From positions 124,001-188,000 of IMG/VR virus record IMGVR_UViG_3300042868_005134: DNA of 64,000 nucleotides. The stretch is one strand, 5' to 3'. Of this stretch, positions 1,070 to 56,669 are shown in pieces (position 1 is the stretch's first letter; the number at the start of each line of letters is the position of its first letter). The position numbers and the translations under genes are program-made. The notes below the pieces were generated by a model, which saw only the letters and a program-made list of their open reading frames with translations, was not told the origin of the DNA and made no database searches.

Positions 1070-4000
1070 TTAACCTAACGCAGCGATTTCACCAGTATTC
1101 TTCAAGCGTAGTGGAATAAAGATAAATTCCACAGCCTTGACTGGTTCAATAGCAATGTCTAAGTATAATTCATTTCTATCAATTCTTGCTGGCGTATTGT
1201 TACTTTCGTCGCATACAACAATGTAGTCATACAACGCACGTTGTCCTACAAGTTCTAGCATTAAACTTTCTGCTGCAGATTTGATCTGATCTCTAGTGAT
1301 TTTATCATTAGGTTCAAAGATATATGGTTTAGCCAAAGCACTTAGTTGTCTACGTAAGTAAATTACCAAGCGAGCTACGTTGATACGATCCAATGCACTT
1401 GCTGCCTTGGCGCGGGTCTTTTGTCCGTAGTTAACCAAGCCGGTTCCTGTTAGGAATGTGATTGGATTAATCTTAGCTTCGTACAATGTATCACGTTGTC
1501 CGTTGTTTAGAGCAACACTGTCAAATTCACCTTCGCTAGTAACATAACCAACTGCAGTTGCGTTAGTAATACCACCACGTCGCACACCTGCTGGAGCAAA
1601 CCAAGGATAAGCCACTTGGTCATTCAACGCAATAGTACGTAAAATCATGTGACTTGGAGGAACAACAACATTGTTACCAAAGTTATCGCTTGTGAAGCCC
1701 CATGGATAGAACATACCCATGTATTCGTCGTAGCTGACGCCGCCTAGGTCGTTGTCTTCTAGTGCCAAACGTTGATTTGTACCCCATGCTAGCAAACTGG
1801 TTGCGTCAGGTGTTAAACGAGCCGGAGTATCACCTACCACAAATGCTGTCAAGCCTCTGTCGTAGTTTAATGTGACCAATTCGCCAATTAGTTCTGGATA
1901 ACCAGGGCAAGCTAACAAGTTAAACACACGACTTTCTTCATCGCGAATTTCTTGATTGCTGTTCACTGTTGCTTGAATAGCACGTACAACAACTTTACGC
2001 TGTGCCTTACGGCCAAATGTACCAGATCCGTCGTCTTGATTGCTGCTCACTGTTACCCAACGATGTGGATAGTAAAGAGCCATGCTGGCGTCGTTCATAC
2101 GAACATTATCAGCATCAACATCGATATAATTTTGTCTAAATTCTTTTACGTTAAAACCACTTCTACGTGTGTTCCATAGCAACATACCTTTTGGATATAG
2201 TGCTGGATCTGGAGCATCAAAGTCTAAGAAATCGCTCGATAACAATTCTTCGATAGTTGCTGGTTCGTCACTGGTTGCGCCTGCTGTGTTGTAGCGAGCA
2301 TCAGCAAACAACATACCGTCTTCAGTACTTTGGTCTGACTTGTCTACCAAGAACCACTTTAATAAATCTTTATTAAATCGATACACTGTTCCCCAGTTTT
2401 CAGTATCGCTGCTGTCAACCCATAAGTCGCCAGTCTCTAACGGTGAACCGTCAATCTGTGTTTCTGGCTTGGTAGCACTTACAAGCGGTCCAGTTGGGTC
2501 TGTTAGTGGTAATTCATTTAGGTATCCCACCCAATCGTTTCCGTCGTGAATCATAATATCCACTTCGTCAACAACACTGCTATACCATAATGTACCGTTT
2601 GCTGTTAAACTTGTTGGAGGATTACTGTTGGCAGAATAAGTCAATGGTTCCCATAAGCTGGCAACATGATCATGATCCCCATCAGGATCTAAATATAAAT
2701 TAAGAGTACCATTACCTGTGCTTGGCACATATTCTGCAAATCCAAGTGCTGCCAATGGGCCGTTTGTACCATCTAACAAGTGAATATCACCGCCTTCTTC
2801 GTGAACAATTTGTAATCTATTCTGACTGTCAACACTGGCTTCAATAGGAGAACCTGATGGTAATAGTGTATTAATAGCAGTGGCCACAGTTGCGGCATTA
2901 GCCACAGCAGGTGTTGCGATAGTAAAACTGATAGTAGCATCATTAGTTAGTGCGGCTGATCCTTGTTCTGTGTAAGCAATGTCAAAAGTATAACTTGTGC
3001 TTTCTCCGCTTACAACAAATGTTAAGTCATTAGCTGGAGTGGCGCCGCCAAGGGCAGTACCTAAAATCTTCAGCGTATTACCTGATTGATAGCCTGTGCC
3101 GCCAGTTGTTATTGCAACTGTTGTATTTGTACTAGAGTATGTGGTTAATACACCCGTTTTAGTAACAGTGGCTATTGCGCTTGCGCCTGTGCCTGTAACC
3201 GTGGCAACTGCTACTGCTGTGTATGTAGCGGCAGCGGACACACTAGTTCCAGCAAGGGTAGTTACCGCAGTTAATACTCCAGCATCGCCAGCAAATGTGC
3301 TTGCTGTCACTTTGCTAGATTTAATAGCTGTAGGAGCAGCACTTTTTCTACGATAGATAGCAAAGTCTGCTTGTTGCGGACTTGTTTCAGTGGTGTTATA
3401 TTTTACATACAATTGACCAGCTGCTAAGTTTGCGCCGCCGCCTGATTTATCTAGCTTGTACAAAGCTGTTGTTGGGTCCGAATACAATGGAGCATCAATT
3501 TGTTCAAATAGTTGTGTTGTGCTATTGTAACGTTTTGCTCTCCAACGTGCGCCTAAATTAGGTTCTGTTGTTTTAATCCACACACTTCCTGTAGGAGCAT
3601 TTAAATCTCCAGTCTTCCATTGAGGAACGCTGGTGTGAGGCGCCATTGATAATAACACTGTGTTAGTCCAGCTATCGTCCCATGCTGTTGTCCCAACTTG
3701 TACCCATGTACCACTGCTATTTCTATACCATACAGTCATTGGGTGAATTGTGGTTAAATCTGGTTCTGTAACATCGTCGCCTACTGCTACAACAGCATAA
3801 CTGCCATTCTTGCCAACACTGCTAACAGGGCCGCCTGTTAAAGCATTTACTTTGGTTGGATCTGTAATTACTAAAGGTATTTTGTTAGTGAATGTTTGGC
3901 CGCCTGTTACAGTGGCAGCATCTCCGTTCCACTCAAAGATACCCCAATTGGTGTTGTCAACATCTAACCAATAGGTTCCATTATTAGGTTCTGCTGCAGG

Positions 4001-4375
4001 AGCGCTGGCACTAGCATCTAGCTCGGCTAGATCTAAATCAGCACGTACTACATAAGCACGATTGCTAACACCTAATAGACTATATGCTGCCTGTAAGCCA
4101 TATTCATTCTGCTCTCCAGCATGAATTGGATTGTTGCTCGCATCTGTCTTGAATAACGGATCGCCAAAAGTATCTCCAAGATCTTTTTGACTTGTTAGAA
4201 GGTAAACTTTGCCTGCGTTGGCCTTTAGTGTACCTGGAGCAGTGCCGTCTCCTGCACTGTTACTTTTGTCTTGAGGAGAGGCAACCACAATCATTGGGAC
4301 TGTGCCGGGCTCCGCTGGTGTATAAAATGATTCGTCAATTACTTTGACTTCTACGCCTGGTGAACTTAATGCCAT
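1070..4375 (-). CDS. gp18: Contractile tail sheath protein (gp18-like) with large insertions
   Basis: N-terminus 'SPGVEVKVIDES', C-terminus 'YPWFAPAGVRRG...INPI...GQKT...SALDRINVARL...FEPND...YIVVCDESNNTPARIDRNELYLDIAIEPVKAVEFI'; SD AGGAGA upstream. Confidence 0.95.
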   Translation of the reverse strand: MALSSPGVEVKVIDESFYTPAEPGTVPMIVVASPQDKSNSAGDGTAPGTLKANAGKVYLLTSQKDLGDTFGDPLFKTDASNNPIHAGEQNEYGLQAAYSLLGVSNRAYVVRADLDLAELDASASAPAAEPNNGTYWLDVDNTNWGIFEWNGDAATVTGGQTFTNKIPLVITDPTKVNALTGGPVSSVGKNGSYAVVAVGDDVTEPDLTTIHPMTVWYRNSSGTWVQVGTTAWDDSWTNTVLLSMAPHTSVPQWKTGDLNAPTGSVWIKTTEPNLGARWRAKRYNSTTQLFEQIDAPLYSDPTTALYKLDKSGGGANLAAGQLYVKYNTTETSPQQADFAIYRRKSAAPTAIKSSKVTASTFAGDAGVLTAVTTLAGTSVSAAATYTAVAVATVTGTGASAIATVTKTGVLTTYSSTNTTVAITTGGTGYQSGNTLKILGTALGGATPANDLTFVVSGESTSYTFDIAYTEQGSAALTNDATISFTIATPAVANAATVATAINTLLPSGSPIEASVDSQNRLQIVHEEGGDIHLLDGTNGPLAALGFAEYVPSTGNGTLNLYLDPDGDHDHVASLWEPLTYSANSNPPTSLTANGTLWYSSVVDEVDIMIHDGNDWVGYLNELPLTDPTGPLVSATKPETQIDGSPLETGDLWVDSSDTENWGTVYRFNKDLLKWFLVDKSDQSTEDGMLFADARYNTAGATSDEPATIEELLSSDFLDFDAPDPALYPKGMLLWNTRRSGFNVKEFRQNYIDVDADNVRMNDASMALYYPHRWVTVSSNQDDGSGTFGRKAQRKVVVRAIQATVNSNQEIRDEESRVFNLLACPGYPELIGELVTLNYDRGLTAFVVGDTPARLTPDATSLLAWGTNQRLALEDNDLGGVSYDEYMGMFYPWGFTSDNFGNNVVVPPSHMILRTIALNDQVAYPWFAPAGVRRGGITNATAVGYVTSEGEFDSVALNNGQRDTLYEAKINPITFLTGTGLVNYGQKTRAKAASALDRINVARLVIYLRRQLSALAKPYIFEPNDKITRDQIKSAAESLMLELVGQRALYDYIVVCDESNNTPARIDRNELYLDIAIEPVKAVEFIFIPLRLKNTGEIAALG

Positions 4376-4484: not shown

Positions 4485-4823
4485 ATGTCAAGACCGTTAT
4501 GTATTTGTGGATATAGACCAGCTGCCGTTAACTATGTTAAGAACGGTCGCACTTACTATCGTAAGAAATGCGAAAGCTGTCTAGCGGGCGGAGTAGGGCA
4601 TGGCATCCCTAAATGGTATTTGGATGGCTACCGAATGAAAAATGTCTGCGATAAGTGTGGCTTTAAAAGCAAACACAGTGAACAGTTTAACGTCTTTCAC
4701 GTGGATGGAAATCTCAATAACAGCAGGCCATTGAATCTAAAAACTGTTTGTGCCAACTGTCAGCGTACTCTAGCCAAAGAAGGCGTTAAATGGTCGCAAG
4801 GTGGGCTTCAACCAGATTTTTAA
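4485..4823 (+). CDS. Zn-finger / HNH-like protein (probably degenerate)
   Basis: Start moved from 4422 to the ATG at 4485 (MSRPLCICG), which follows the late promoter. It has CxC, CxxC and CxxC motifs plus 'FHVDGNLNN...NLKTVCANC', an HNH-like motif. Confidence 0.7.
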   Translation: MSRPLCICGYRPAAVNYVKNGRTYYRKKCESCLAGGVGHGIPKWYLDGYRMKNVCDKCGFKSKHSEQFNVFHVDGNLNNSRPLNLKTVCANCQRTLAKEGVKWSQGGLQPDF

Positions 4824-5433
4824 TTTGAGAGAACAAGTCGTCTATTGTTCCGTTGTTATCGATTTCTAAGTCAATGCCACGGCCAATCCAGGCAGTTTCG
4901 CTAGCGTGGATTCCTAATCGTTCCATTCGCACTTTACTAATAGACCAGCTCATATTACTATGACCTTGGTTAACGTTCCACGCATCTTGATACCATTCAG
5001 GATCACTGCCGCGTACTACACGCACCACTTGTCCGCCTGCGTTCTTGATGGCGGTAATTTCATTAGGGAATCTTACATCGCTGATAACAATGTTATCCTT
5101 AGTTTTACGCATCTTATTTTCCAAGCTGGCAATCCAGATGTCATCGTGAAACCCGTTGCGGCAAACTTCTGTGCCCCATTGTTGTAAGATCCATCTAGGA
5201 GTTAGAGTGGGCTTGTTTAAGCGTTCTGCCCACCAAGGGTCAACTTGTTCGCGCCATTCACGAGCTTCTTTGGTACGACCTTCTAGTAGTGTTCTGTCCC
5301 ATCCGAACACTGCAGCAACAGCATCTTTAAGTGTGTTGGCAAAACTATCTCTTCTAAAACCATGAAAGTTTACCAAATAATCTGCGGCAGTATCTTTGCC
5401 CGAACCAATGAATCCCACGAAGCCTATAATCAT
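4786..5433 (-). CDS. Deoxynucleoside monophosphate kinase (T4 gp1-like)
   Basis: P-loop 'GFIGSGKDT', 'SFANTLKD', 'TPRWILQQWGTEVCR', 'VISDVRFPNE'. Confidence 0.9.
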   Translation of the reverse strand: MIIGFVGFIGSGKDTAADYLVNFHGFRRDSFANTLKDAVAAVFGWDRTLLEGRTKEAREWREQVDPWWAERLNKPTLTPRWILQQWGTEVCRNGFHDDIWIASLENKMRKTKDNIVISDVRFPNEITAIKNAGGQVVRVVRGSDPEWYQDAWNVNQGHSNMSWSISKVRMERLGIHASETAWIGRGIDLEIDNNGTIDDLFSQIKNLVEAHLATI

Positions 5434-44916: not shown

Positions 44917-44923
44917 TATTTAT
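44917..44923 (-). promoter_or_regulatory. Late promoter (ATAAATA) overlapping portal stop codon
   Basis: 6 nt before the ATG at 44910; no SD. Confidence 0.65.
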
Positions 44924-46650
44924 GCTGCCGGTGCTGTAGGAACCGGCCCAGGTGCTGCTGGTGCTGTTCCCGGTGGTGCGCCAGGCATTTCCATTCCTGG
45001 TGGCGCTTCGGTGTCGGCGGCAGCGCCAGCATCAGATTCTATACCTGCTTGACTAACTCCAACGCCGCGTAATTCTCCACTACTGTCAGTGGGTGTTGGC
45101 TTGCCTTTGCCGTTTTCTTCAGCCCACAAGCGTTCGTTTTCTGCAACTTCTTCTTCGCTTAGTCCTAGATAACGTTTCAAAGCAAAACGTTTTGAGATAT
45201 AAGTCTGTTGACTAATAGTACCGTATGTGTTGATACGCTGATTATCTAACTCTGCTTGACGATAAGTGGCAAAGTTTTGCGGCGGTTGGAACTTTAATTC
45301 AAACAGAGCACTGTCAATATTGATGCCTCTTTCATACAAATACAGTTTAAATTCTTGATCAAATACATCTTGCATCAAGCTCTGTAGTCGCATACAGTAG
45401 TTGTTAAATCGCAATTCTTGAATATATGCTGTGCCAACTCTTCCGTCGTTATACTGTGATTGGCTGTCTTCTGCACCAGTTGGCAGATAGCTACTTGGGA
45501 TTCTTAAACCGCGAAATAATTTGTTTGTAAAGTATCTTAAGTCGTCAATTTCACCTAGGTTTGTACCGCCTGGCAGTGTTTCAACTTTACTTCCGCGACC
45601 TTCTGCTGTGGTTGGAAAGAAGTAATCTTCGTTAATGCTTAATGGATTGTAAGCACTATCGATAACGTTGGTACCACCGCCAGTTGCGCTGGGGATACGT
45701 CTTTGATGAATTTCATTTTTAACACGTTCCACAAAGCCCATGGCCAAGTGGCTGGGCATGTTACCCACATCAATGTAAAAAATACGTCTTTCAGGAGCAC
45801 GTTGTATGCGATAGATTAAAATAGCATCTTCTAGTAATTCTTTTTGTTTGAATACTTTAAAAACATTTTCTAATAAACTGTTTCCAAACGGAAAGTTATT
45901 GTCTAGACCTTCGCTTAAACTTAAATGTATCACATGCTTGGCATCTACTGCTAGTTCGTTTTGTTGTGTATCAAAGCGTGTGCCCACAGTGCCACCTTGC
46001 GGATATGAACCAGTCATGCCTCTTGCGGGGCCGCTGCCGTTGGGCCCAGCGTAATTAGTTCCGCGATTGTTGGTGTTAAGATTGTTGGGCTGAATAGTGG
46101 TTGTGACCAAGTCCATAAAATTAGGATTTAAATCACGAATAATGTATTGTTCAGGTTCTTTGCCTTCACTTTCGTTCACAATAATTTTAACTATTTTACT
46201 AGAATCTATGTAAACCCATTTTTTATTTTCAGGATCTCTTACAAAGAATGCATCGCCGTATTTGAATACGTTGCGTACAATTCTAAAAATTCTAGTTTCG
46301 AACTTTTGTAATTTTGTCCATTGCTGTAGATATTCTCTCAAGATGGCAATTTCACTATTAGTAGCTTTGCTCTTGAAAAATAAATGGAATGGTGTTTGAT
46401 TTTCTCTATTCTTTTGACTACAAAATTCAGCAATGATGTCCAAGGCCGCATTGACTTCACTGTCCATGTCCATGGTATCATATTGCAAATAGCGTTCAAT
46501 ACGATTAGGGGCGCCGGAATAAACATCCGGTAAAAAGCTAGAATAGTTTTTTCTAGCTGGGCCTACACCGTTGCCGCTATTAGTTAACGGACTGCTGTTT
46601 GAGCCCGATGATCTTACATTAACAGGGGTGAAATATTTTTTCCAGCTCAT
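44920..46650 (-). CDS. gp20: Portal protein (gp20-like)
   Basis: 'YDTMDMDSEVNAALDII', 'LEDAILIYRIQRAPERRIFYIDVGNMP', 'EDYFFP..AEGRGSKVETLPGG.NLGEIDD..YF..KL...L.IP.S'. Confidence 0.95.
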   Translation of the reverse strand: MSWKKYFTPVNVRSSGSNSSPLTNSGNGVGPARKNYSSFLPDVYSGAPNRIERYLQYDTMDMDSEVNAALDIIAEFCSQKNRENQTPFHLFFKSKATNSEIAILREYLQQWTKLQKFETRIFRIVRNVFKYGDAFFVRDPENKKWVYIDSSKIVKIIVNESEGKEPEQYIIRDLNPNFMDLVTTTIQPNNLNTNNRGTNYAGPNGSGPARGMTGSYPQGGTVGTRFDTQQNELAVDAKHVIHLSLSEGLDNNFPFGNSLLENVFKVFKQKELLEDAILIYRIQRAPERRIFYIDVGNMPSHLAMGFVERVKNEIHQRRIPSATGGGTNVIDSAYNPLSINEDYFFPTTAEGRGSKVETLPGGTNLGEIDDLRYFTNKLFRGLRIPSSYLPTGAEDSQSQYNDGRVGTAYIQELRFNNYCMRLQSLMQDVFDQEFKLYLYERGINIDSALFELKFQPPQNFATYRQAELDNQRINTYGTISQQTYISKRFALKRYLGLSEEEVAENERLWAEENGKGKPTPTDSSGELRGVGVSQAGIESDAGAAADTEAPPGMEMPGAPPGTAPAAPGPVPTAPAA

Positions 46651-46652
46651 AA

Positions 46653-49502
46653 TTAACTATACATGTTCTTTGGATTTTTCTCGAGCGCCGTGATTTGTTT
46701 TCTTCCCAAATCATCGCTCTGTGAAAGTAGCTTGTTCATAGTTATATTTAACATATCTAAACCCTTTACTACGTCTTCTAGAGCAGCGGTCTTGCCGCCT
46801 CGCTGTGCTGGTTTATCGTCAGCTTGAGATTTGGCAGCTGGTGCCTTGGCAGCTTGTTCTTTCGCGTCTGCTTGGGCTTTGGCTTCTTCTGCAGGTTTAT
46901 TTACTGCAGCAGGCACACTGGCAGCATTGGCTTTCATTTGGGCTCCAAAGCCGGGCAAATTAATGGCATTCAAATCTATAGCAGGAGTGGCTGCTATGGG
47001 TGCTGAGTACTTGCCGGCACCCATAGAGGCTTCTGGTTCTTCTGCGCCAATAGCAGCCATGTTTAATAATGAAGTATCTTTTTGATACTTTTCTCTAGCT
47101 GCTTTTTCTGCTTCGGCACCTTGTTCGATACCAATTAATTTTAACGCTTCTTCTTTTTCTATTTCAGATAATCTGGCTTCTTGTCCTTGTAAAGTTACTG
47201 CTAGTTGTTCTGTAACAAGTTTTTTAGTCTCTTCAACTGATTCTTGTTTTTTACTGGTTTCCCATGTGATACCGTCAGCAATTTTCTTTTGTAGCTCTTC
47301 CTGTTTTTTTGAAAATTCTTCTTTTATCTTTATTGCTTCGTCGTCTGCCTTCATAACAGCTTGGACTTTGGAAAATTTTCTATCTTCAACAGCCATTCCT
47401 TCAATCAGAATGTTTTTTCTTGCGGCCATGTCTTCATTAAACTTTGATTTTAATTCTGACATTTCTTTTTCAGCACTCTTACTGTCATCACTTTGAACAC
47501 GTTTAGTAGTTGACTCGCCGCCAGTCATGGAACTGATTGATGTGCTAATAGTCTTAGACATTTCTGTCATATTGATATTAGGTTCTGTCTTAGCAGGCAT
47601 ACTGATAGCTTTGGCAATGCCAGCCATATCAACGGCAGGTGCTTTGGCTGGCATACTAATAGCTTTGGATATACTGCTCAAGTCAAATCCGTCCATGCCA
47701 CCTGTAGGATTTCCCCTTGGCGGAGCCATACCTTTCATTGATTCGTATGCTGCTTTAAATTTGTCTTCTTTAGTGTCCAAGTCTGGAGGAGGAAGTTTTC
47801 CAAGTATATTCTTAACACCACTCATGCCAGCAGCAGCAATAGTGTCCTTCATCTGTCCTTGGTTTAATACAAACTCAGGACCTTCTTCTGCTAAAGTTGA
47901 CAGTGTTGGTTGGCTAACATATCCGCCATCTGCATGTCGTGTTAAACCTGTAACCTTACCAGTAATATTTAGAGTGTCGGCTCCAATGTTTGATAAATTA
48001 CTCAGAGCTTTTGTAATTTCACCAACTACACCGCCACTTTCGTTTTCTTTTCTTGCTTCTGCTTCGTATTTGCCTTCGCCTGGCTTGGGCACAAACGGTT
48101 GTGGGTTTTGACCTTTCCTGGCGGCATCTTCCATATTGACTGCGGCATTCTTACCCGGACCTGCTAGATTGTTAGCAGTTTGTTCTCCAATTTCACCTAT
48201 ACGACGGGCGCCACCGGCAATGCTTTCGCCGGTCGCTTTATTCTTAACTTCCGATGCGGCAGCAACACCTGCTCCAAGATTTTGTCCAGCTATTTGTGTT
48301 GCTATAACTCCTTGAGTTGCTCCGCTAACACGTTCTCCGCCAGGTTTTAATCGACCTTCTTGACTTGCTATAATATCAGTTCTAATTTTGCTAAGGGCAG
48401 TAGCATAATCAGTTTGACTTTTTAATAAGTTTGTATTTCCTTTTACTACACTCATTACACTATCGTGTAATGCCATGTTGTCTTCTGTACTCTTCTTTAA
48501 AATTGTACCTACGCTGCCTGCAGCATCTCCCATGGCGGCCATTCGTAAAAGTGTTGGATCTCTTTGATTACGAGCGTTGGCTGCTTCTGCTTCCTTGTTG
48601 GCTGCTTCTGCTGCAACAATGTTACCTTTGGCCAAGTGGCCCATTTGCTCGCCAGTTTTCTGTGCGGCCTCGCCTAGTAATGCGTATTGAGTGGCAGCTT
48701 CTTCGCTAGTAACTGTTCCAGTGGCAAACATTTCTTTTGCCATTTGTCCCATACCGCGAGCTTCTGCTTGAGCAAATTGTTTTTGGAATCCTTCTCTTGC
48801 TGCCGCTTCTGCGGCGGCACCTTGTTCAATTCCAATTAATCTTAACTTTGCTTCAATTTGTCCGTCGGTGCTGCGTTTCTTAGCAGCTTCCATTTGTTCT
48901 TCTTTACTTTTGCCTGTGAGTTTGGCAATGGCATCCATCTCTTTAGCTAATGAAGCTGCAGCTTCTCTTGATTTTACACCTGCGGCACCTTCAATACCCA
49001 TAGTGTAACGTTGTGTACTGGCTTGTAACGCAAGAACTTCGTTAAGTTCTTTAGCATTGTATCCCATCTGCTGTAGTTCGTCGCCAGCGTTACTATCAAA
49101 GAAACTCTTGCTTAATTTGCCAAATGCTTCAGCACCGCGAGTGACACTGCCACCAAGGCCGGCCATTTGTTTTCCGTTATTAGCAATAACGTTAGCGAAA
49201 TCATTTAGGCTCAATCTACTGCCAGCGGCAGCAACATTCATGCCAATTAGGTCATTGCTAAAATTAGCGCCATGTTTGCTAAGTCCTTGGAACGTATCAG
49301 CACTTGACTTAGCAGCATGTAGGAAAGACTCTGCGCCATCTTTCAAGCCTTCTTTAACTTTACTTGTGTCAAACCCTTGATTGCCACCACCGCTTGGTGG
49401 CGCACCTCCGCCACCTACAGTTACAGGGCCGCGGCCACTAGATTTCAAAGCGTTTTCAAACGCTTGTTGCATCATTAACTGATCATTTCTATCTAAAGCC
49501 AT
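46653..49502 (-). CDS. Tape measure-like protein
   Basis: 949 aa, A/E/K-rich helical sequence with the 'ADGGYV..PT...LAEEGPEFVL' motif typical of tape measure proteins; adjacent to the gp26-like chaperone. Confidence 0.7.
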   Translation of the reverse strand: MALDRNDQLMMQQAFENALKSSGRGPVTVGGGGAPPSGGGNQGFDTSKVKEGLKDGAESFLHAAKSSADTFQGLSKHGANFSNDLIGMNVAAAGSRLSLNDFANVIANNGKQMAGLGGSVTRGAEAFGKLSKSFFDSNAGDELQQMGYNAKELNEVLALQASTQRYTMGIEGAAGVKSREAAASLAKEMDAIAKLTGKSKEEQMEAAKKRSTDGQIEAKLRLIGIEQGAAAEAAAREGFQKQFAQAEARGMGQMAKEMFATGTVTSEEAATQYALLGEAAQKTGEQMGHLAKGNIVAAEAANKEAEAANARNQRDPTLLRMAAMGDAAGSVGTILKKSTEDNMALHDSVMSVVKGNTNLLKSQTDYATALSKIRTDIIASQEGRLKPGGERVSGATQGVIATQIAGQNLGAGVAAASEVKNKATGESIAGGARRIGEIGEQTANNLAGPGKNAAVNMEDAARKGQNPQPFVPKPGEGKYEAEARKENESGGVVGEITKALSNLSNIGADTLNITGKVTGLTRHADGGYVSQPTLSTLAEEGPEFVLNQGQMKDTIAAAGMSGVKNILGKLPPPDLDTKEDKFKAAYESMKGMAPPRGNPTGGMDGFDLSSISKAISMPAKAPAVDMAGIAKAISMPAKTEPNINMTEMSKTISTSISSMTGGESTTKRVQSDDSKSAEKEMSELKSKFNEDMAARKNILIEGMAVEDRKFSKVQAVMKADDEAIKIKEEFSKKQEELQKKIADGITWETSKKQESVEETKKLVTEQLAVTLQGQEARLSEIEKEEALKLIGIEQGAEAEKAAREKYQKDTSLLNMAAIGAEEPEASMGAGKYSAPIAATPAIDLNAINLPGFGAQMKANAASVPAAVNKPAEEAKAQADAKEQAAKAPAAKSQADDKPAQRGGKTAALEDVVKGLDMLNITMNKLLSQSDDLGRKQITALEKNPKNMYS

Positions 49503-49528
49503 ATTAAAATTTCCAAAAAACTACGCAC

Positions 49529-49553
49529 ATAAATAATCGTATAATATATTTAT
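49529..49553. promoter_or_regulatory. Overlapping divergent late promoters (plus 49529-49535, minus 49553-49547)
   Basis: ATAAATA on each strand in the 66-bp gap between the tape measure and gp26-like genes. Confidence 0.65.
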
Positions 49554-49568
49554 CGGGATAAAAAAGCT

Positions 49569-50384
49569 ATGAATCCATTACAAAAATACTTTAGACAACC
49601 CAAGTTGTTTATCAGTTTGCCCAGCAAAGGGCTGTACTACGAGGAAGGTACTCTACAAGGAGATGTTAGTAAAGTGCCAATTTTTGCCATGACTGGCATG
49701 GATGAACTCATAATGAAAACACCTGACAGCTTGTTTAACGGTGAAGCCACAGTAAAATTAATAGAAAGTTGTTGTCCATATATTACAGACGCACATAAAG
49801 TGCCCAGTATTGATCTAGATGTATTATTAGTTTCCATTAGAATGGCAACATACGGTAAAGAAATGAGTATTGGACATACCTGTACTAACTGTGGTACTGA
49901 AAACGACTTTGCCATTGATTTAACTAGTGTCATGGATCACTATGCTGATAAGAATTTTGACAATAGACTAGTAGTTGACGAAGAAATTACCATTAACTTT
50001 AAGCCGTTAAGCTACGAAGAAATGACAATAGTAAACTTGGAAAATTTTAAATTACAAAAAATGCTTGGTCAGATTGCTGATATAGATATCGACCGTAGGC
50101 AACAAGTCATGGATGATATCTATGCTAAACTAGCTGAAATACAAGTACATGTATTTTTAACTGCCATTGAGTCAGTTCAAATTCCCAATGTATTAGTAAC
50201 TGAGAAAGATCATATTCGAGAGTGGTTGTCTAACACTAACCGAGAACATTATACTCTTATCAAGAGTAAACTTGAAAAGAATAAAGAACTTTGGGAGATG
50301 CCAAAACAAAAAGTCATTTGCGGCAATTGTGGCACTGAAAACGCTATTGAAGTTGTAATGGACCAATCAAGTTTTTTCGTATAA
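49569..50384 (+). CDS. Baseplate hub assembly / tail assembly chaperone (gp26-like)
   Basis: 'MNPLQKYFRQPK.FI.LPS.G.YY', 'AMTGMDE...KTPD.L.NGEA', two CxxC motifs, ends 'SSFFV*'. Confidence 0.8.
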   Translation: MNPLQKYFRQPKLFISLPSKGLYYEEGTLQGDVSKVPIFAMTGMDELIMKTPDSLFNGEATVKLIESCCPYITDAHKVPSIDLDVLLVSIRMATYGKEMSIGHTCTNCGTENDFAIDLTSVMDHYADKNFDNRLVVDEEITINFKPLSYEEMTIVNLENFKLQKMLGQIADIDIDRRQQVMDDIYAKLAEIQVHVFLTAIESVQIPNVLVTEKDHIREWLSNTNREHYTLIKSKLEKNKELWEMPKQKVICGNCGTENAIEVVMDQSSFFV

Positions 50385-50611
50385 AACTGTTACCCTTGTC
50401 TAGATCTGACATCGAAGAGTTGGTTAACAGTTTAGAATTAGATACAAAACAAATAAAAGATGAAATCTTTCGCATAAGTTGGTACATGCGAGGCGGAGTA
50501 AGCAGTCAGGATCTAATGCACGTTTACGGCTACGAGGATAGGCAGATCATGAATGAGATTATAAAAGAAAATATTGAAATTACCAAAAATAGCCGTATGG
50601 CTATTATTTAA
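50372..50611 (+). CDS. Downstream ORF lacking a canonical start; predicted -1 frameshift extension of the gp26-like protein
   Basis: The -1 frame is open from 50351 to the stop at 50611, with no ATG or SD near its start; slippery heptamer T TTT TTC at 50372-50378. Confidence 0.65.
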   Translation, partial: FFRIKLLPLSRSDIEELVNSLELDTKQIKDEIFRISWYMRGGVSSQDLMHVYGYEDRQIMNEIIKENIEITKNSRMAII

Positions 50612-51926
50612 TTTCGTCGTAACCATAGACGCCGTATTTTTTCTTAGGGTCGTCCTGTATTTTTAAAGTAGGATCAGGAATGCCGGCAACACCAACCCTA
50701 GCTTTTATGTCATTAAGTTTGTCGTTGCCTACTAGACGATATCCATTTTCATCACTAATTTGTTGATTATTAATGTAAAGTTTCTTGCCAACCCATTGAA
50801 TATTCATACCATTTGTAGCTTGTCTTGCGCCATCGGCAGCATCACCAGTTGGTGGTTTTACTGCGGTCTTACCAGGTAGTGGACCATCTAGTAGTCCAGC
50901 TTCCTGTAATCCTTTTTCTAGTAAATCAATAGCGGCTGCTGTCAATGCCCCTGTTGGTTCAGTAATTGCTCTTACCAAAGAACTATTTAAAAATTCTTTA
51001 CCAGCACTGGTACGCATGAATATCAAGAAAGCTGGGGCCGCAGGCCCCATTTCAATTAATTTAGAAATACCTTTTGCCACGTTAGTAGGCAAGCTAACAA
51101 ACATACCTAAATATTTTGTTGTTGTAATGCTGGCGCCGCCCAGTGTAGCTGCACCTGTGGCAATACCTTTAAACATGCCTGACATTGCGCCAAAGAATTT
51201 GCTGGCCACTCCAGTATTTAAGGCAACACCAATGGCCAATTCTCCTAACAGTTTCTTTCTTAACTGTTGATACTTGTTATAGGCTTCTTGCTCTGACATT
51301 TTTCCAAAAGGAGAATCTTTGCCAGCTTTATAATCTTGGTAGTCTTCCTCTAACACGGACAAATCCACGTAGTATTCTCTTACAAATTCTAAACCCACAA
51401 CAGTTTTTATCACAGTCATGGCTACATCGGGTATAAATCCCATCCTTGCCTGGGCTGCTGCCTTCATGGAAGCATTGGCACCACGCATTTTTAAGTAGGC
51501 TTTAATTTTTTCAAACCCTACTTTACTGTCAGGGTCAAATTTTCTCAAGTTTATTTTTTCTGTTTTAGCTACTGTTTTTTCTAATTGGGCAAGACGCTCA
51601 GTAACTTTCTTTTTTAACCACTTGCCGCCTTTACTTTGCCATGACTTAGGAATAAGTTTAAGTATTCCTGCTTTACCCAGCTTGGCAAAGCCAGGTGTAA
51701 ACAATAGTACAGCATCTATGAATAGATCATTCCATTCGTCGTCAGTAATTGATTCAGGATCTTGGTTGTATTTGCCAATGAATTTGTATATTTCGTAGGC
51801 ACTCCAAGCACTCATGCCTACAGAGATTGCGGTAATTATTGTACCTATTCCAATACCTGCTATTACAAGAGGTACGGCTTCATTCAATGATTCAGTTCTT
51901 TCAGAGACTATTTGATGGACTTTCAT
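50604..51926 (-). CDS. Hypothetical protein with MKVHQIVSE...LNE leader and hydrophobic segments (putative internal head / ejection protein)
   Basis: 440 aa; late promoter 6 nt upstream; TM-like stretch AVPLVIAGIGIGTIITAISVGMSAW. Confidence 0.6.
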   Translation of the reverse strand: MKVHQIVSERTESLNEAVPLVIAGIGIGTIITAISVGMSAWSAYEIYKFIGKYNQDPESITDDEWNDLFIDAVLLFTPGFAKLGKAGILKLIPKSWQSKGGKWLKKKVTERLAQLEKTVAKTEKINLRKFDPDSKVGFEKIKAYLKMRGANASMKAAAQARMGFIPDVAMTVIKTVVGLEFVREYYVDLSVLEEDYQDYKAGKDSPFGKMSEQEAYNKYQQLRKKLLGELAIGVALNTGVASKFFGAMSGMFKGIATGAATLGGASITTTKYLGMFVSLPTNVAKGISKLIEMGPAAPAFLIFMRTSAGKEFLNSSLVRAITEPTGALTAAAIDLLEKGLQEAGLLDGPLPGKTAVKPPTGDAADGARQATNGMNIQWVGKKLYINNQQISDENGYRLVGNDKLNDIKARVGVAGIPDPTLKIQDDPKKKYGVYGYDEIK

Positions 51927-52818: not shown

Positions 52819-53061
52819 TTAGTTCTTATTGGCCTCTTGATCTTTTAAAAGTGATTCTTTGTACTTGGGACTTTTAACTTTTGGTTTAGTTGCCCTAATT
52901 GCCTGTATTTCTTCGCGCCTAGTGATTGTTAAGTCTCTTATTTCAGCCAAGAGCCGTCGTAGCTCGATACCAGCCACATGAGTTTGTCTAGCTTGCCATC
53001 TCTGGTGTAGCTTGTAGTACTCATGTACTTTTCTCATTAGACTGGTATGTGCGTCTTCCAT
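52819..53061 (-). CDS. Small helical hypothetical protein
   Basis: ATG at 53061 overlaps the TGA of gp46 (TGATG). Confidence 0.65.
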   Translation of the reverse strand: MEDAHTSLMRKVHEYYKLHQRWQARQTHVAGIELRRLLAEIRDLTITRREEIQAIRATKPKVKSPKYKESLLKDQEANKN

Positions 53062-54842
53062 CAATTTTCAATTTCTAAGTCATTAGCATAGCTAGTGAAT
53101 CCATTTTCTTTAATCACTTTGAGTACATTGTTCACTCGTCCGATTAATTCGTCCTTGTGACTGATCAAATAAATGTTTTTCTTACGTTCCCTAGCCATCT
53201 TCTTTAAGACACTTAAGGCATTTTCTACGCCTGCGGCATCTAGTCCGTTGTCAATAAGTTCATCAATGAATAACAAGTTGATACTTTGATACAAACTTTC
53301 CCACACATCTCTAAAACTCCAGCTTAATCCTAAAATTAACCTATTGCGTTCTCCACGTGACAAATTGTCAAAGTCTAGATCCTGCCCAAGTTGTGTAATT
53401 TCCACAGTTAAATCATTTTGAAATACCACTGTGTGGGGTAATCCCATTTTATCCAAATAGTAGGTAAGCCTATTATTAAGGTAGGCAAGATTTTGATCTA
53501 TGATCTTTTTACGGATAAAACTATCTTTGCTGGTCAGCAACTTGAGCAAAAACTCTTGATGGCCCTTAAGTACATTGAGATTGTTTATGCTATCCCATGT
53601 GATTTCTTGAAGCGCAGTATTACGCAAATCATCTATTTGTTCTTGATAAGGATCTGTTTCTTGCTGTCTAGCACCCAACGCAGTTTCTAAACTGGTTAAA
53701 TTGTTTTGATGTTTAAGAGCTTCTTCTAGTGTATCGTAATAAGTTGTTGGCCTACCGTTGATATCGCCGATACCTTCAAGCTCAGTCACAATAATAGCAT
53801 AGCTATCACTGAGGCTTTGAAGATATGTGTAAGCATCTGCTAGATTCTTTTCAGCAAGCACGGACATTTCTTCATGCTTGTGGGTGTGTAGCTCTTGCTC
53901 ACAAGCTGGACAAGTGTTATTTTTTAGTTGCTCTATTTCTTTTGTGTATTTGGTTACACTTTTATCAGCTTGAATTAACGCAGTTTCAATTGTGGCCTTT
54001 TCTTTGTTAAGGCTTTTTATTTTAGCTGCTTGCTCATTGTATGTTTTTAACTTAGCGTGAGCTGTGAGTTCTCGTTCGATGTCTACTGCTTGTAGTTCTT
54101 CTATGGACTTGGTAATTCTATCGCAATCTGTTCGTTGCTGAGCATACCAAGCACTCAGTCTTGTCTCCAAACCAGTAATACTCAATTGAATTTTTTCATT
54201 AGACTTCTTTACAGCTTCGATATCTGCGTTCTCTTGATAAATTTGATCTTTAGTTACTCTCACTTGCTCTTTAAGAGCCTCTGCCTTTTCACTTAGTAAG
54301 GTAATGCCTAACAGTTGTTCAATGATAGCACGTTGTTCGTTGGCTTTCATGCTTAAGAACGGTTCGGTATAGGTATTCAAAGCCAAGATATGCTTAAACA
54401 TATCGTGACTCATACCCATTAAGTCATCAAGGTCCTTTTGCGTTTCCCGCATGTCACCTTGACTGTCATCAGCAGAGTCAACAGAGTGTTCTTGATCGTT
54501 CACATAGAACTTCATGATAGCAGGTTTGCGACCCCGTTCAATCTTGTACTTGTTACCGTCTTTTTCAAAACTCAGTGTAACCAACATGTTTTTGCCATTG
54601 ATCTTGTTGATCAAGTTATCTTTCTTGATATTGGTCAATGCTGTGCCGTATAACGCATAGGTTAAGGCATTGATAATGGTAGTCTTACCGGTACCGTTAC
54701 GGCTTCCACTGTCATCTCCACCTTGATCTAGGTTTTCACCTAGTACAAGGGTAAGTTGTTCTTTACAGAAGTCTACCGCTTGGGTTTGATTACCCACACT
54801 CATGAAATTTTTAACAGTTAGTTCTTTAATTTTAATTGTCAT
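53061..54842 (-). CDS. gp46: Recombination endonuclease ATPase subunit (gp46 / Rad50-SbcC-like)
   Basis: Walker A GTGKTT, coiled coil with CPAC hook, signature LSRGE, Walker B LLFIDE, H-loop ISHK. Confidence 0.95.
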   Translation of the reverse strand: MTIKIKELTVKNFMSVGNQTQAVDFCKEQLTLVLGENLDQGGDDSGSRNGTGKTTIINALTYALYGTALTNIKKDNLINKINGKNMLVTLSFEKDGNKYKIERGRKPAIMKFYVNDQEHSVDSADDSQGDMRETQKDLDDLMGMSHDMFKHILALNTYTEPFLSMKANEQRAIIEQLLGITLLSEKAEALKEQVRVTKDQIYQENADIEAVKKSNEKIQLSITGLETRLSAWYAQQRTDCDRITKSIEELQAVDIERELTAHAKLKTYNEQAAKIKSLNKEKATIETALIQADKSVTKYTKEIEQLKNNTCPACEQELHTHKHEEMSVLAEKNLADAYTYLQSLSDSYAIIVTELEGIGDINGRPTTYYDTLEEALKHQNNLTSLETALGARQQETDPYQEQIDDLRNTALQEITWDSINNLNVLKGHQEFLLKLLTSKDSFIRKKIIDQNLAYLNNRLTYYLDKMGLPHTVVFQNDLTVEITQLGQDLDFDNLSRGERNRLILGLSWSFRDVWESLYQSINLLFIDELIDNGLDAAGVENALSVLKKMARERKKNIYLISHKDELIGRVNNVLKVIKENGFTSYANDLEIEN

Positions 54843-55852
54843 AGGCTATTATAGATACTCAATAATACTTTACTATCGAAAGTGTCACTTTCGATATTGA
54901 CCAACTGATTGCTCACAATTTGATCCACACTTTCAAATGCTTGTATATTGATATCAGTATTGATTTCAACTTCTTTCTTTTCAGATATCAGTGTTAGTTC
55001 TCTAATATCATAATCACTAATAAATTTTTCCTTGATAAAGCTAGCTTCTTCGTAGCTGATGTCAATGTCGAGACTTACTCGCAGATGCATCTTGCTGGTA
55101 ATCAGCGTATCTGCTTCGTCAATCAACTGACTTAATTTAATAGTTCTAAATTTAGGACACTCTGTCCAGTTAATATACTGGGGCACACCATCCCACTCTA
55201 AAATCATCATGCCGCGTTCGTCGTCCCACGTATCAGCATAGTTGTGCGGAAACGCATTACCAATGTAATGCATATTTTGACGTTGTTGTCGTTTATGAAA
55301 GTGTCCGCTAAACCCAAGTTCGTAGTTTTTAAAACTATCCAACTGAATTTCACCATGATCCGGCATCTGAACCATGGCATTCATGAAGAAACTGGGCAAT
55401 TCAAAGTGACCAAAGATATATTTGCCACCTTTCTTGCCTATGGTTTTCCATTCGTCTCCGACAAGCCACGGACATAAGGTGACGTCGCCAATAGTAGTAG
55501 GTTCGTGTACCACAGTAATTCCAGGAATATACTTTCCGAATTCGACGCTGTGAATATCCCGCTTGTCTTTGTAATAAAGATCATGATTACCAGGAAAGAA
55601 ATAAAACTTATCAAAAGCCTGTCCCAGTTTCTCAAGGGCTCTAAGGCTGTAGTCCATAGTTGTAATATTAAGACTATTGCGGTTGTGATGCCAATCGCCC
55701 ATAAAAATACCTGTATCACATCCGTTCTCCTTGGCCTTTGCAATATACCAATCAACAAAATCTTCACAGTCTTGATTGTGTGTTTGACTGTTTGATTTTA
55801 ATCCAAAATGTATGTCTGTAAAGCAAGCAACTTTTTTAAATAAATTACTCAC
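54839..55852 (-). CDS. gp47: Recombination endonuclease nuclease subunit (gp47 / Mre11-SbcD-like)
   Basis: Metallophosphoesterase motifs DIHFG, GDWHHNR, GNHD, GHFE, SGHFH; probable GTG start at 55852 (ORF track gives 55861). Confidence 0.95.
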   Translation of the reverse strand: MSNLFKKVACFTDIHFGLKSNSQTHNQDCEDFVDWYIAKAKENGCDTGIFMGDWHHNRNSLNITTMDYSLRALEKLGQAFDKFYFFPGNHDLYYKDKRDIHSVEFGKYIPGITVVHEPTTIGDVTLCPWLVGDEWKTIGKKGGKYIFGHFELPSFFMNAMVQMPDHGEIQLDSFKNYELGFSGHFHKRQQRQNMHYIGNAFPHNYADTWDDERGMMILEWDGVPQYINWTECPKFRTIKLSQLIDEADTLITSKMHLRVSLDIDISYEEASFIKEKFISDYDIRELTLISEKKEVEINTDINIQAFESVDQIVSNQLVNIESDTFDSKVLLSIYNSL

Positions 55853-56669
55853 CTGATTCACCTTCGAAACGTTTTATAGCATTTGCATGTTCACCAGCGC
55901 CAGTTCTGCTGTAGCTAGGATTCATGCCATTCATCTCCAATAGGTCGTCACGAATATTTTGATTACGTTTTTCTAAATTAATAATGCGAACAAAACTGTT
56001 AGTCACCGCTGCCGTAAAGTAGGCAAATGGGTTATCACTTTTGCTTTCATCAAATTGTAAACCAATTTGTGTTAGTTGTAAAATAGCCTGTCCTTTCATT
56101 TCGTCGTTGTAAGTATAACCTCGTACATTGCCTCTTGTGGCATATCGTTCACATAATTTAATGTACATACGGGCAAGTGTATTTGTAATCTGCCCGTGAT
56201 CTTTGTTAAATTTACCAGTTTCTAAATCACCCTTCCAGTGACTTTTTCCAACACATACTAAAATATCTTTATCGTCGAACTTCCAGTGTTGAAATGGAGG
56301 AAAATTAACTTTATCTCTATGATCCGCTATGGTCTTTGGATTTTTTTTACGGGTACCGTTTAACGGAATGTGCTCAAACGACATAATTCTAAACACAATG
56401 TCTGTTTTAGCAATCTTTTTATAGTCCACTTCGCAGTCTGCTTGTTTGACTTTTTCCCCGGCAGCTTTACGTCGAGCATACGCCTCTTGACTCATTCGTT
56501 TGGCCTGTGCCCGTTTAGCTTCAGCAACAGTTCGAATGTTAATTTTATCAACAGTGGGCAATATCAAATCATAACGATGATATTCTGGTTGGGTAAATGA
56601 GCAGAATGTATTTTTGCTTTTGTGTATTTCTTCTAATAAATCTTTGTTGTTTAAGTAATTAACTTTCAT
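55845..56669 (-). CDS. gp55: Late-transcription sigma factor (gp55-like) with large insertion
   Basis: 'YLNNKDLL', 'N.RGYTYNDEM', 'FD..KSDNPFAYFT....NSF.R....EK'; directly upstream of gp47/gp46. Confidence 0.85.
   Translation of the reverse strand: MKVNYLNNKDLLEEIHKSKNTFCSFTQPEYHRYDLILPTVDKINIRTVAEAKRAQAKRMSQEAYARRKAAGEKVKQADCEVDYKKIAKTDIVFRIMSFEHIPLNGTRKKNPKTIADHRDKVNFPPFQHWKFDDKDILVCVGKSHWKGDLETGKFNKDHGQITNTLARMYIKLCERYATRGNVRGYTYNDEMKGQAILQLTQIGLQFDESKSDNPFAYFTAAVTNSFVRIINLEKRNQNIRDDLLEMNGMNPSYSRTGAGEHANAIKRFEGESGE

What the first reader, a model, noticed from the sequence alone, without database searches (positions are those of the whole stretch)
50361..50611. Predicted programmed -1 frameshift in a T4-type gp26-like gene: a lambda G/GT-style chaperone pair
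Seen: the gene ends ...TCA AGT TTT TTC GTA TAA, so T TTT TTC (50372-50378) is an in-frame X XXY YYZ heptamer one codon before the stop codon. Slipping -1 reads TTT TTT CGT ATA AAA CTG TTA CCC TTG TCT..., continuing straight into the 71-aa ORF for a 347-aa fusion. That ORF has no ATG or SD at its start, and its frame opens only 21 nt before the heptamer. The locus adjoins the tape measure gene. Known: a -1 frameshift producing G and GT chaperones next to the tape measure gene is widespread in long-tailed phages (lambda, Mu, P2). I do not recall it being established for T4-type gp26/gp51 genes. Inference: this links T4-like hub chaperones to the G/GT system.
Basis: partly seen in the sequence, partly recalled or inferred. 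Interest (0 to 1): 0.75.

Follow-up and report, generated by a model that had tools for sequence, protein, structure and literature searches.

The report
Frameshifted tail chaperone gene, T4 family
A lake-water jumbo phage almost certainly makes a short and a long version of its T4 gp26/gp51-type tail/hub assembly chaperone from one gene by a programmed -1 ribosomal slip. The signal is strictly conserved in hundreds of related phages but was not annotated in any record I inspected.

Summary
The PF12322 gene at 49569-50384 carries an in-frame T_TTT_TTC at 50372-50378, one codon before its stop. The -1 frame then runs to 50611, giving products of 271 aa and 347 aa.

Evidence that this is functional recoding:
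- All 66 jumbo-phage relatives first examined, 10 further cultured jumbo phages, 80 cyanophage loci, and phages phi-ST2, pf16 and S-SM1 have the same in-frame T_TTT_TTY and a conserved 58-84 aa -1 ORF.
- That ORF has no conserved start codon or Shine-Dalgarno site.
- The RNA just downstream is unusually structured.
- About 20 related proteins of 319-351 aa encode the same two parts in one frame, joined exactly at the slip site. Two of their phages were examined, and both also carry a separate short copy.
- T4 does the same with two genes: gp26 is the short form and gp51 the long form, and gp51's C-terminal tail matches the extension.
- The window's phage has only one PF12322 gene.

The chaperone reading is therefore supported. 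However, a 2022 paper I could not read (Vladimirov, Gautam and Davidson) already identified the T4-like tail assembly chaperone genes and their two-gene solution. I rate this as a new, widespread and unannotated member of a known kind.

The parts
49569..50384 (+). Zero-frame gene for the short form (271 aa) of a T4 gp26/gp51-family (PF12322) hub/tail assembly chaperone. It is the only PF12322 gene in this 383-kb phage genome.
   Evidence: PF12322 at 68.6 bits against a cut-off of 24.5. phrog_150 'baseplate hub', E 3e-23. Single copy in the genome. AF2 model pLDDT 91.6.
50372..50378 (+). Slippery heptamer T_TTT_TTC in X_XXY_YYZ register. It encodes the conserved Phe-Phe, and both tRNA-Phe can re-pair in the -1 frame.
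   Evidence: Sequence read directly. Conserved in every relative examined. Codon choice is NNT-TTT-TTC in 112 of 114 unique genes, although TTC is only about 25% of Phe codons elsewhere in those genes.
50382..50384 (+). Zero-frame stop codon TAA, 3 nt after the heptamer. It terminates the short form.
   Evidence: In relatives the zero-frame stop lies 3-33 nt after the heptamer.
50378..50611 (+). The -1 frame coding extension: 77 codons, RIKLLPLS...ISWYMRGGV...EDR...AII, then stop TAA at 50609-50611. It forms the C-terminal domain of the 347-aa long form.
   Evidence: Gap-free protein conservation starting at the slip site. 411 database matches, about 20 of them C-terminal parts of 319-351 aa single-frame proteins. 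Helical in the AF2 model of a natural fusion. Linked to the T4 gp51 tail through cyanophage and Gram-positive phage profiles.
50384..50433 (+). Predicted RNA hairpin starting 5 nt after the heptamer. The 9-bp outer stem pairs 50384-50392 with 50425-50433. It is a candidate frameshift stimulator.
   Evidence: MFE -14.6 kcal/mol, but z is only -1.2 for this sequence alone. Across relatives the 65 nt after the heptamer are more structured than control windows in the same genes (mean z -1.9 and -2.2 against about 0, p about 1e-12). Stems are lineage-specific with modest covariation.
46653..49502 (-). Divergently transcribed 949-aa neighbour, the probable tape measure protein and presumed client of the chaperone.
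   Evidence: Language-model features resemble tape measure clusters (a lead only). The ORF in the same position in RaK2 is annotated as TMP-like virion protein. The portal / large ORF / PF12322 order is conserved. There is no Pfam or PHROG hit, and BLASTP against the RaK2 ORF gives only E 0.01.
49528..49554 (.). Intergenic region with two divergent near-consensus T4-late-promoter-like motifs: CATAAATA on + at 49528-49535, and GATAAATA on - at 49547-49554.
   Evidence: Read by eye and not tested further. The assignment rests on established knowledge of the T4 late promoter TATAAATA.

Best explanation
The gene at 49569-50384 encodes the tail/hub assembly chaperone of a T4-related jumbo phage. 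It belongs to the family that contains both T4 gp26 and T4 gp51. Most ribosomes terminate at TAA 50382 and release a 271-aa short form. A minority slip back one base on U_UUU_UUC (50372-50378), probably while paused by a hairpin that starts 5 nt downstream. They then read CGU AUA AAA ... to 50611 and make a 347-aa long form with an extra helical domain of 77 residues. By analogy with lambda G/GT and with T4 gp26/gp51, both forms would act together and transiently on the tape measure protein (probably the divergent 949-aa neighbour) and the central hub or tube during tail initiation. In that scheme the rare long form carries the extra binding domain.

Shown here: the recoding architecture, its conservation, the coding nature of the -1 ORF from the slip site onwards, and the existence of colinear long forms plus separate short forms in lineages without the shift.

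Inferred: the ribosomal (rather than transcriptional) nature of the shift, its efficiency, the stimulator, and the chaperone mechanism and its clients.
For: - Family: PF12322 and phrog_150.
- Slip-site conservation: all 66 first loci (33-100% aa identity, including Atu_ph07 and GAP32) have in-frame T_TTT_TTC 3-12 nt before the stop, followed by a -1 ORF of 72-81 aa counted from the slip site. So do 10 of 10 further cultured jumbo phages of different genera (T_TTT_TTY), 80 of 80 cyanophage loci, and S-SM1, KVP40-like phi-ST2 and pf16.
- Nucleotide-level selection: NNT-TTT-TTC in 112 of 114 unique genes, against 25% TTC elsewhere.
- The -1 peptide aligns without gaps from the slip site (FFR.KLL...).
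- No conserved start or SD. The first ATG is at codon 38 in the window and in 29 of 53 relatives.
- Downstream RNA is structured relative to in-gene controls, and several relatives have strong hairpins 5-10 nt after the heptamer.
- Natural fusions: about 20 representatives of 319-351 aa carry the extension in frame at their C-terminus, with junctions such as ..SELFRNKIL... In the two whose contigs I examined, a short PF12322 gene lies directly upstream, in the same portal / large-ORF synteny.
- T4 gp26 and gp51 both match PF12322 over its full length. The cyanophage extension profile matches the last ~47 aa of every gp51 tested (E 2e-8 to 7e-4; hhalign 96.7%).
- The window's genome has only one PF12322 gene.
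- In Gram-positive myoviruses the family occupies the slot between tube and tape measure genes.
Against: - No direct evidence of the long product exists for this phage. The only RNA-library contig across the site shows merely that it has no indel.
- The window's own hairpin is not significant on its own (z -1.2), and there is no single conserved helix.
- The direct profile match between the jumbo-type and cyanophage/gp51-type extensions is weak (E 0.008). That link is transitive, through Gram-positive phage sequences (89% and 92% probability).
- The gene is not between tube and tape measure genes here. The tube gene lies 49 kb away.
- The tape measure assignment of the neighbour is soft.
- The homologue in phage CBB is annotated as a structural protein, which a pure chaperone would not be.
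- The complex prediction of extension with tail tube gave no answer.
Confidence: 0.85

Rival explanations
1. The long form is made by transcriptional slippage. RNA polymerase adds one extra U in the U6 run, giving an mRNA in which the two ORFs are in frame. The protein would be identical to the ribosomal-frameshift product.
For: The site is a homopolymeric T run. Two relatives have longer runs: XacN1 has T7 and RsoM2USA has T9-10. The products cannot be told apart at protein level.
Against: The run is exactly T6 followed by C in 112 of 114 unique genes, which is shorter than the runs of about 8-9 that established knowledge associates with efficient bacterial RNA polymerase slippage. The run always sits in X_XXY_YYZ register. 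Structured RNA follows at the spacing typical of ribosomal stimulators. The one RNA-library contig across the site has no indel, but contigs drop rare variants.
Confidence: 0.08
2. The 71-aa ORF is an independent small gene, as annotated in most GenBank records (for example cyanophage 'gp51, baseplate hub assembly catalyst'). It would be translated by its own initiation or by termination-reinitiation, and the TTTTTTC is conserved only because it encodes the Phe-Phe motif.
For: Phe-Phe is conserved at protein level even in T4 gp26, which ends KEFFELL and has no extension. In 29 of 46 cyanophage sequences an ATG lies 5 codons after the slip site. Gene callers and annotators list the ORF separately.
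Against: No start codon position or SD is conserved. 35 of 53 jumbo and 40 of 46 cyanophage sequences have no SD-preceded start anywhere in the ORF. The residues encoded before any possible start, and before the zero-frame stop (R.KLL), are conserved and align with the in-frame junction of natural fusions and of gp51. T4, HSE3 and GXN1 encode the same FF as TTC TTT, so the amino acids do not require TTT TTC. The third base of the preceding codon is T in 114 of 114 genes.
Confidence: 0.04
3. The arrangement is a decaying or pseudogenised fusion. A one-base indel in a formerly continuous long gene would have produced it, only the short form would be functional, and no recoding would occur.
For: Continuous long genes exist in relatives. 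T runs are hot spots for indels and for assembly errors.
Against: The same frame relationship and intact -1 ORF occur in well over 150 independent sequences spanning 13-100% extension identity, under obvious purifying selection. The window sequence is reproduced in 14 independent lake metagenome assemblies. Genomes with the split arrangement have no second PF12322 gene that could supply the other form.
Confidence: 0.02

Closest known systems
Lambda G/GT and the conserved -1 frameshift of tail assembly chaperone genes in long-tailed phages (Xu, Hendrix and Duda 2004; cited in PMC9024508)
   Same: Two overlapping ORFs. A slippery heptamer lies near the end of the first ORF. The short and long products share their N-terminus. 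The gene is associated with the tape measure gene, and in Gram-positive relatives it sits exactly between the tube and tape measure genes.
   Different: The protein family and fold are different: a Zn-ribbon-containing PF12322 domain of about 270 aa with no solved structural relative. Lambda G is about 130 aa by my knowledge. The heptamer is U_UUU_UUC, whereas lambda uses G_GGA_AAG (my knowledge). In this phage the gene is divergent from the tape measure gene and far from the tube gene.
T4 gp26 and gp51 (hub assembly chaperones; identified as the T4-like tail assembly chaperones with a non-frameshift, two-gene solution by Vladimirov, Gautam and Davidson, Virology 2022, known to me only through its title and the paraphrase in PMC10885494)
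   Same: Same Pfam family. gp26 corresponds to the short form and ends at the same FF motif. gp51 corresponds to the long form, and its C-terminal ~47 aa are homologous to the frameshift extension.
   Different: T4 uses two separate, divergently transcribed genes and has no slippery heptamer (TTC TTT). The window's phage has one gene plus recoding.
Cyanophage and KVP40-like 'gp26' plus small 'gp51' ORF pairs (T4-like core gene clusters 11 and 12 in RefSeq S-SM1)
   Same: Identical architecture: T_TTT_TTC 3 nt before the stop, followed by a 58-66 aa -1 ORF.
   Different: The extension is shorter and lacks the ISWYMRGG segment. In the records I inspected these are annotated as two independent genes.
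E. coli dnaX tau/gamma -1 frameshift (my knowledge)
   Same: A homopolymer-type X_XXY_YYZ site with a downstream hairpin. In cyanophages there may also be an upstream SD-like GAGGG about 10 nt before the site (seen in the tails).
   Different: In dnaX the shift produces the shorter product. Here it produces the longer one.

Membership tests
PF12322 (T4_baseplate; T4 gp26/gp51 family) | Profile HMM match above Pfam's gathering score | tested here: met
   68.6 bits against a cut-off of 24.5, residues 51-270 on profile positions 37-218 of 219. T4 gp26 and gp51 both match the full profile.
PF12322 (T4_baseplate; T4 gp26/gp51 family) | Shared fold with other viral members | tested here: met
   The AF2 model of the natural long-form relative P0040 matches BFVD 'baseplate hub (assembly) protein' models: E down to 3e-17, and TM-score (by target) 0.79-0.80 for the two best hits. 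The window's own model (pLDDT 91.6) has the same order of secondary-structure elements but was not itself searched in BFVD.
PF12322 (T4_baseplate; T4 gp26/gp51 family) | Two CxxC pairs (putative zinc ribbon) | tested here: met
   CTNC and CGNC are present in the window protein (alignment A3). The four Cys are invariant in the natural fusions. They are lost in some sublineages (L058-L064 and the short paralogues).
Frameshift-expressed tail assembly chaperone pair (G/GT type) | Conserved slippery sequence near the end of ORF1, with ORF2 in the -1 frame and lacking its own start | tested here: met
Frameshift-expressed tail assembly chaperone pair (G/GT type) | Location between the tail tube and tape measure genes | tested here: inconclusive
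   In the window the gene abuts the probable tape measure gene but is divergent from it, and the tube gene is at 403-1041. The canonical order sheath-tube-PF12322-small ORF-TMP is met in SP-15, BRock and HSE3.
Frameshift-expressed tail assembly chaperone pair (G/GT type) | Both short and long forms are required. The long form equals the short form plus an extra domain. | tested here: met
   Met indirectly. Lineages without the shift keep one short and one long paralogue: T4, and the two tandem-gene contigs examined from a second jumbo clade.
Frameshift-expressed tail assembly chaperone pair (G/GT type) | Long form made at a low, fixed ratio; proteins absent from the mature virion; binding to tape measure and tube proteins | not testable with these tools
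   The complex prediction of extension with tube protein returned 'no answer'. The CBB homologue is annotated 'structural protein'.
Lambda gpG / HK97 gp10-type tail assembly chaperone fold | Structural similarity to solved tail assembly chaperones | tested here: not met
   No PDB match with Foldseek (best E 0.07, TM 0.12). VIA wide search found only a generic helical hairpin with Z up to 8.1. A missing match does not prove a different fold.
T4-type two-gene chaperone arrangement (separate gp26 and gp51 genes) | Two PF12322 genes in the genome, one short and one long | tested here: not met
   There is only one PF12322 locus in the complete 383-kb genome.

The most novel reading that the evidence does not exclude
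The PF12322 chaperone family is the universal tail assembly chaperone of T4-related and many other contractile-tail phages, and its need for a short and a long form has been met in at least three interchangeable ways. The first is -1 frameshifting on U_UUU_UUY, which is probably the ancestral and by far the commonest state (jumbo, cyanophage, KVP40-like, rhizobiophage and pf16 lineages). The second is gene duplication into short and long genes, which arose independently in Tevenvirinae (gp26/gp51) and in a second jumbo clade. The third is a so far undescribed +1 (or -2) recoding event in Gram-positive myoviruses, where the homologous extension lies in the +1 frame with no X_XXY_YYZ site. The 'gp51' core gene of cyanophages would then not be a gene but the 3' half of a recoded one.
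Probability: 0.4. Interest if true: 0.7.

Novelty: new member of a known kind. Interest (0 to 1): 0.55.

Why it matters
- It supplies the piece missing between two known facts: that long-tailed phages make their tail chaperones by a conserved -1 frameshift, and that T4 seemed to be an exception with two genes (gp26 and gp51).
- Most relatives of T4 outside the Tevenvirinae appear to use the classical frameshift in the same protein family. The T4 state therefore looks derived.
- In practice, the small ORF after the gp26-like gene in hundreds of deposited genomes is probably mis-annotated as an independent gene. The extension matched 581 phage records, and the gp26-like gene has homologues in 95 jumbo-phage records. 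The affected genomes include model cyanophages, KVP40-like vibriophages, RaK2, 121Q and PA5oct.
- The mis-annotation affects core-genome counts, the databases used for proteomics searches, and training sets for frameshift predictors.
- It also provides a clean natural experiment on why two chaperone forms are needed.

Tried and rejected
- hhalign of the jumbo extension profile against whole T4 gp51, and against its tail alone, was not significant. Homology had to be established through the cyanophage profile.
- RNAalifold found no consensus structure across 29 aligned relatives. Two hand-specified helices gave only modest covariation.
- Foldseek against PDB, VIA wide search and AFDB Swiss-Prot gave no meaningful relatives. 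AFDB holds no viral proteins, so the last search was uninformative.
- The complex prediction of extension with tail tube protein gave no answer and is not used as evidence.
- BLASTP of the 949-aa neighbour against the RaK2 TMP-like ORF was marginal (E 0.01).
- Laying metatranscriptome contigs showed presence without indels but cannot quantify slippage.
- Ten literature searches found no description of this frameshift. The key 2022 paper surfaced only as a citation and could not be read.
- I rejected pseudogene or assembly error as an explanation, because the sequence is conserved and is reproduced in 14 assemblies.
- I rejected independent initiation of the small ORF.

Full report
**1. The observation**

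The window holds an ORF at 49569-50384 (+, 271 aa). It ends ...TCA AGT TTT TTC GTA TAA. T_TTT_TTC at 50372-50378 is therefore an in-frame X_XXY_YYZ heptamer one codon before the stop.

The -1 frame opens 21 nt upstream of the heptamer and runs to TAA at 50609-50611. A ribosome that decodes Phe269 and Phe270 and then slips back one base would read CGT ATA AAA CTG... This adds 77 residues, for 347 aa in total, with junction ...SSFF|RIKLL.

The heptamer alone is not unusual in this AT-rich sequence: 19 copies against 17.9 expected.

**2. What the gene is**

- The 271-aa protein matches Pfam PF12322 'T4_baseplate' (68.6 bits, cut-off 24.5) and phrog_150 'baseplate hub'.
- The window comes from a complete 383,411-bp virus record that recurs in lake-water metagenomes.
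- On the minus strand upstream lie a T4-type portal gene (44920-46650) and a 949-aa ORF (46653-49502) with no family hit.
- That 949-aa ORF resembles tape measure proteins by language-model features. It also occupies the position of the TMP-like virion protein of RaK2. Direct similarity to the RaK2 protein is marginal, so I treat the tape measure assignment as probable only.
- The tail tube (403-1041) and sheath (1070-4375) genes lie 45-49 kb away in the window.
- The closest cultured relatives are jumbo myoviruses: GAP32, CBB, RaK2, 121Q, PA5oct, XacN1, Atu_ph07 and others.

**3. Conservation of the recoding signal**

| Set examined | Result |
|---|---|
| 64 IMG/VR loci (33-100% identity) plus Atu_ph07 and GAP32 | Every one has in-frame T_TTT_TTC 3-12 nt before the zero-frame stop, and a 72-81 aa -1 ORF |
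| 10 further cultured jumbo phages from different genera | All the same, with T_TTT_TTC or T_TTT_TTT |
| 80 cyanophage loci | All the same |
| RefSeq cyanophage S-SM1, KVP40-like vibriophage phi-ST2 (Straboviridae), Pseudomonas phage pf16 | All the same |

The cyanophage-type extension occurs in 581 phage records.

Codon choice across 114 unique genes:
- The codon triplet is NNT-TTT-TTC in 112. The remaining two have TTT-TTT.
- TTC is only about 25% of Phe codons elsewhere in these genes.
- The third base of the preceding codon is T in all 114, where 28-79% would be expected.
- T4 gp26, which has no extension, encodes the same Phe-Phe as TTC TTT.

None of the roughly 20 GenBank or RefSeq records I inspected marks a joined CDS. 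The second ORF is either annotated separately or not annotated at all.

**4. The -1 ORF is coding from the slip site on**

- Twenty-nine diverse extensions align essentially without gaps, starting at FFR.[KR]L[LI].
- No start codon position is conserved. In the window and in 29 of 53 relatives the first ATG is at codon 38, inside the conserved WYMRGG motif.
- 35 of 53 jumbo sequences and 40 of 46 cyanophage sequences have no SD-preceded start at all.

**5. Natural fusions and two-gene lineages**

An exhaustive profile search with the extension found 411 proteins. About 20 of the best 150 are 319-351 aa long and carry the extension (profile positions 2-79) at their C-terminus.
- Their sequences are PF12322 domains that run straight into the extension.
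- The junctions, such as ..LDHSELFRNKIL.. and ..LDWSSSFRNKIL.., align with the window's ..MDQSSFF|RIKLL...

I examined the contigs of two of these proteins, P0025 and P0040.
- On both, a second, short PF12322 gene (287-294 aa, ending ..SNFMS* or ..TSFFND*) lies immediately upstream.
- On the P0025 contigs the surrounding order is the same portal / 829-aa ORF arrangement.

T4 shows the same logic.
- gp26 (208 aa) and gp51 (249 aa) both match the whole PF12322 profile and each other.
- The last ~47 residues of every gp51 tested match the cyanophage extension profile from its second position. E values are 2e-8 to 7e-4 in a 1309-ORF database, and hhalign gives 96.7%.
- The jumbo-type extension links to these through the Gram-positive phage extensions (hhalign 89% and 92%). 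The direct link is weak.

The window's genome has only one PF12322 gene. One gene with recoding here thus corresponds to two genes elsewhere. This is the strongest argument that both products are made and needed.

**6. Stimulatory RNA**

- In the window a hairpin (50384-50433, -14.6 kcal/mol) starts 5 nt after the heptamer, but it is not significant on its own (z -1.2).
- Many relatives have strong hairpins at 5-10 nt spacing: L032, L055, L058, L061, Atu_ph07 and a cyanophage, with z from -2.5 to -3.8.
- The 65 nt after the heptamer are markedly more structured than control windows of the same genes. Mean z is -1.9 and -2.2 against -0.06 and -0.19, with Mann-Whitney p about 1e-12. The sequences are related to one another, so this p-value is optimistic.
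- There is no single conserved helix. Two registers show modest covariation.

I regard a lineage-specific downstream stimulator as likely but unproven.

**7. Structure**

- The AF2 model of the short form is confident (pLDDT 91.6). It has no relative among solved structures, so it cannot be filed with lambda-type chaperones by fold.
- The model of a natural long form (pLDDT 89.5) shows the extension as four helices.
- That model matches many viral 'baseplate hub (assembly)' proteins in BFVD.
- A complex prediction of the extension with the tail tube protein gave no answer.

**8. Function**

- Leiman et al. 2010 list gp26 and gp51 as hub assembly chaperones, and describe gp51 as required for assembly but absent from the particle (PMC3004832).
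- In Bacillus phages SP-15 and HSE3 and Streptomyces phage BRock the PF12322 gene and a small downstream ORF lie between the tail tube and tape measure genes. This is the canonical tail assembly chaperone slot.
- PRFect (PMC10885494) cites Vladimirov, Gautam and Davidson 2022. It says that some T4-like phages carry one short and one long chaperone gene instead of frameshifting.

The chaperone identity of the family and the two-gene solution are therefore already published. I could not read that paper, and my ten searches found no description of the -1 frameshift itself.

**9. Rivals**

- Transcriptional slippage would give the same protein. It is disfavoured by the short T6 run, the strict register and the downstream structure, but it is not excluded. 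The one RNA-library contig across the site has no indel, which says little.
- Independent initiation of the small ORF, and pseudogenisation, are both contradicted by sections 3-5.

**10. Verdict**

This is a real, strongly conserved programmed -1 recoding site in the single gp26/gp51-family chaperone gene of a jumbo phage. It is a new member of a known kind that appears widely unannotated, and it is informative about how the T4 arrangement arose.

Noticed in passing
L081:2366-3305, L083:2474-3401, L084:2480-3494, L082:2132-3215, L165-L170: In Gram-positive myoviruses (SP-15, HSE3, GXN1, BRock and IMG/VR relatives) the PF12322 gene sits between the tail tube and tape measure genes and ends ..PEFFRPKFR* or similar. 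The homologous extension ORF lies in the +1 frame, is open 26-122 nt before the stop, and has no X_XXY_YYZ heptamer. This suggests a +1 or -2 recoding event, or reinitiation, that I did not resolve.
   Followed up: partly
L270:1019-1201 (S-SM1 'gp51'), L080:3076-3249, L271:1813-1980; 581 phage records: The small ORF annotated as 'gp51 / baseplate hub assembly catalyst' (T4-like core gene cluster 12) in cyanophages and KVP40-like phages appears to be the -1 extension of gp26 rather than a separate gene. In 17 of 46 cyanophage sequences there is no ATG until codon 21.
   Followed up: partly
L188:1680-1704: In one two-gene lineage the short paralogue still ends ..ACA TCT TTT TTC AAT GAC TAA, keeping a T_TTT_TTC relic. 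The long paralogue starts at an ATG overlapping that stop, in the -1 frame. This may be a snapshot of the transition between frameshift and duplication.
   Followed up: no
contig of GCA_015689235.1 listed (no DNA held): The T4-type portal gene next to the tandem PF12322 genes carries an intein (Portal_T4 / Intein_splicing / Portal_T4, 1015 aa).
   Followed up: no
window 50604-51926 (-): A 440-aa ORF converges on the extension ORF and overlaps its last 8 nt. It has no Pfam or PHROG match.
   Followed up: no
window 49528-49554: Two divergent near-consensus T4-late-promoter-like motifs, CATAAATA (+) and GATAAATA (-), lie in the 66-nt gap between the probable tape measure gene and the chaperone gene. 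I read them by eye.
   Followed up: no
L085-L164, 10-14 nt upstream of the heptamer: Many cyanophage genes have GAGGG or GAAGG (encoding Glu-Gly) about 9-10 nt before T_TTT_TTC (tails listed). This is reminiscent of the upstream SD-like stimulator of dnaX. The window has only TGGA at that position.
   Followed up: no
L077:1492-2349 (CBB_250): The homologue in phage CBB is annotated 'structural protein'. If that annotation rests on virion proteomics, it would mean the chaperone or its long form stays in the particle.
   Followed up: no
window 53061-55861 (-), 4786-5433 (-): Other T4-type genes in the window: a gp46/SbcC-like nuclease subunit, an adjacent 340-aa ORF in the gp47 position, and a dNMP kinase.
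   Followed up: no
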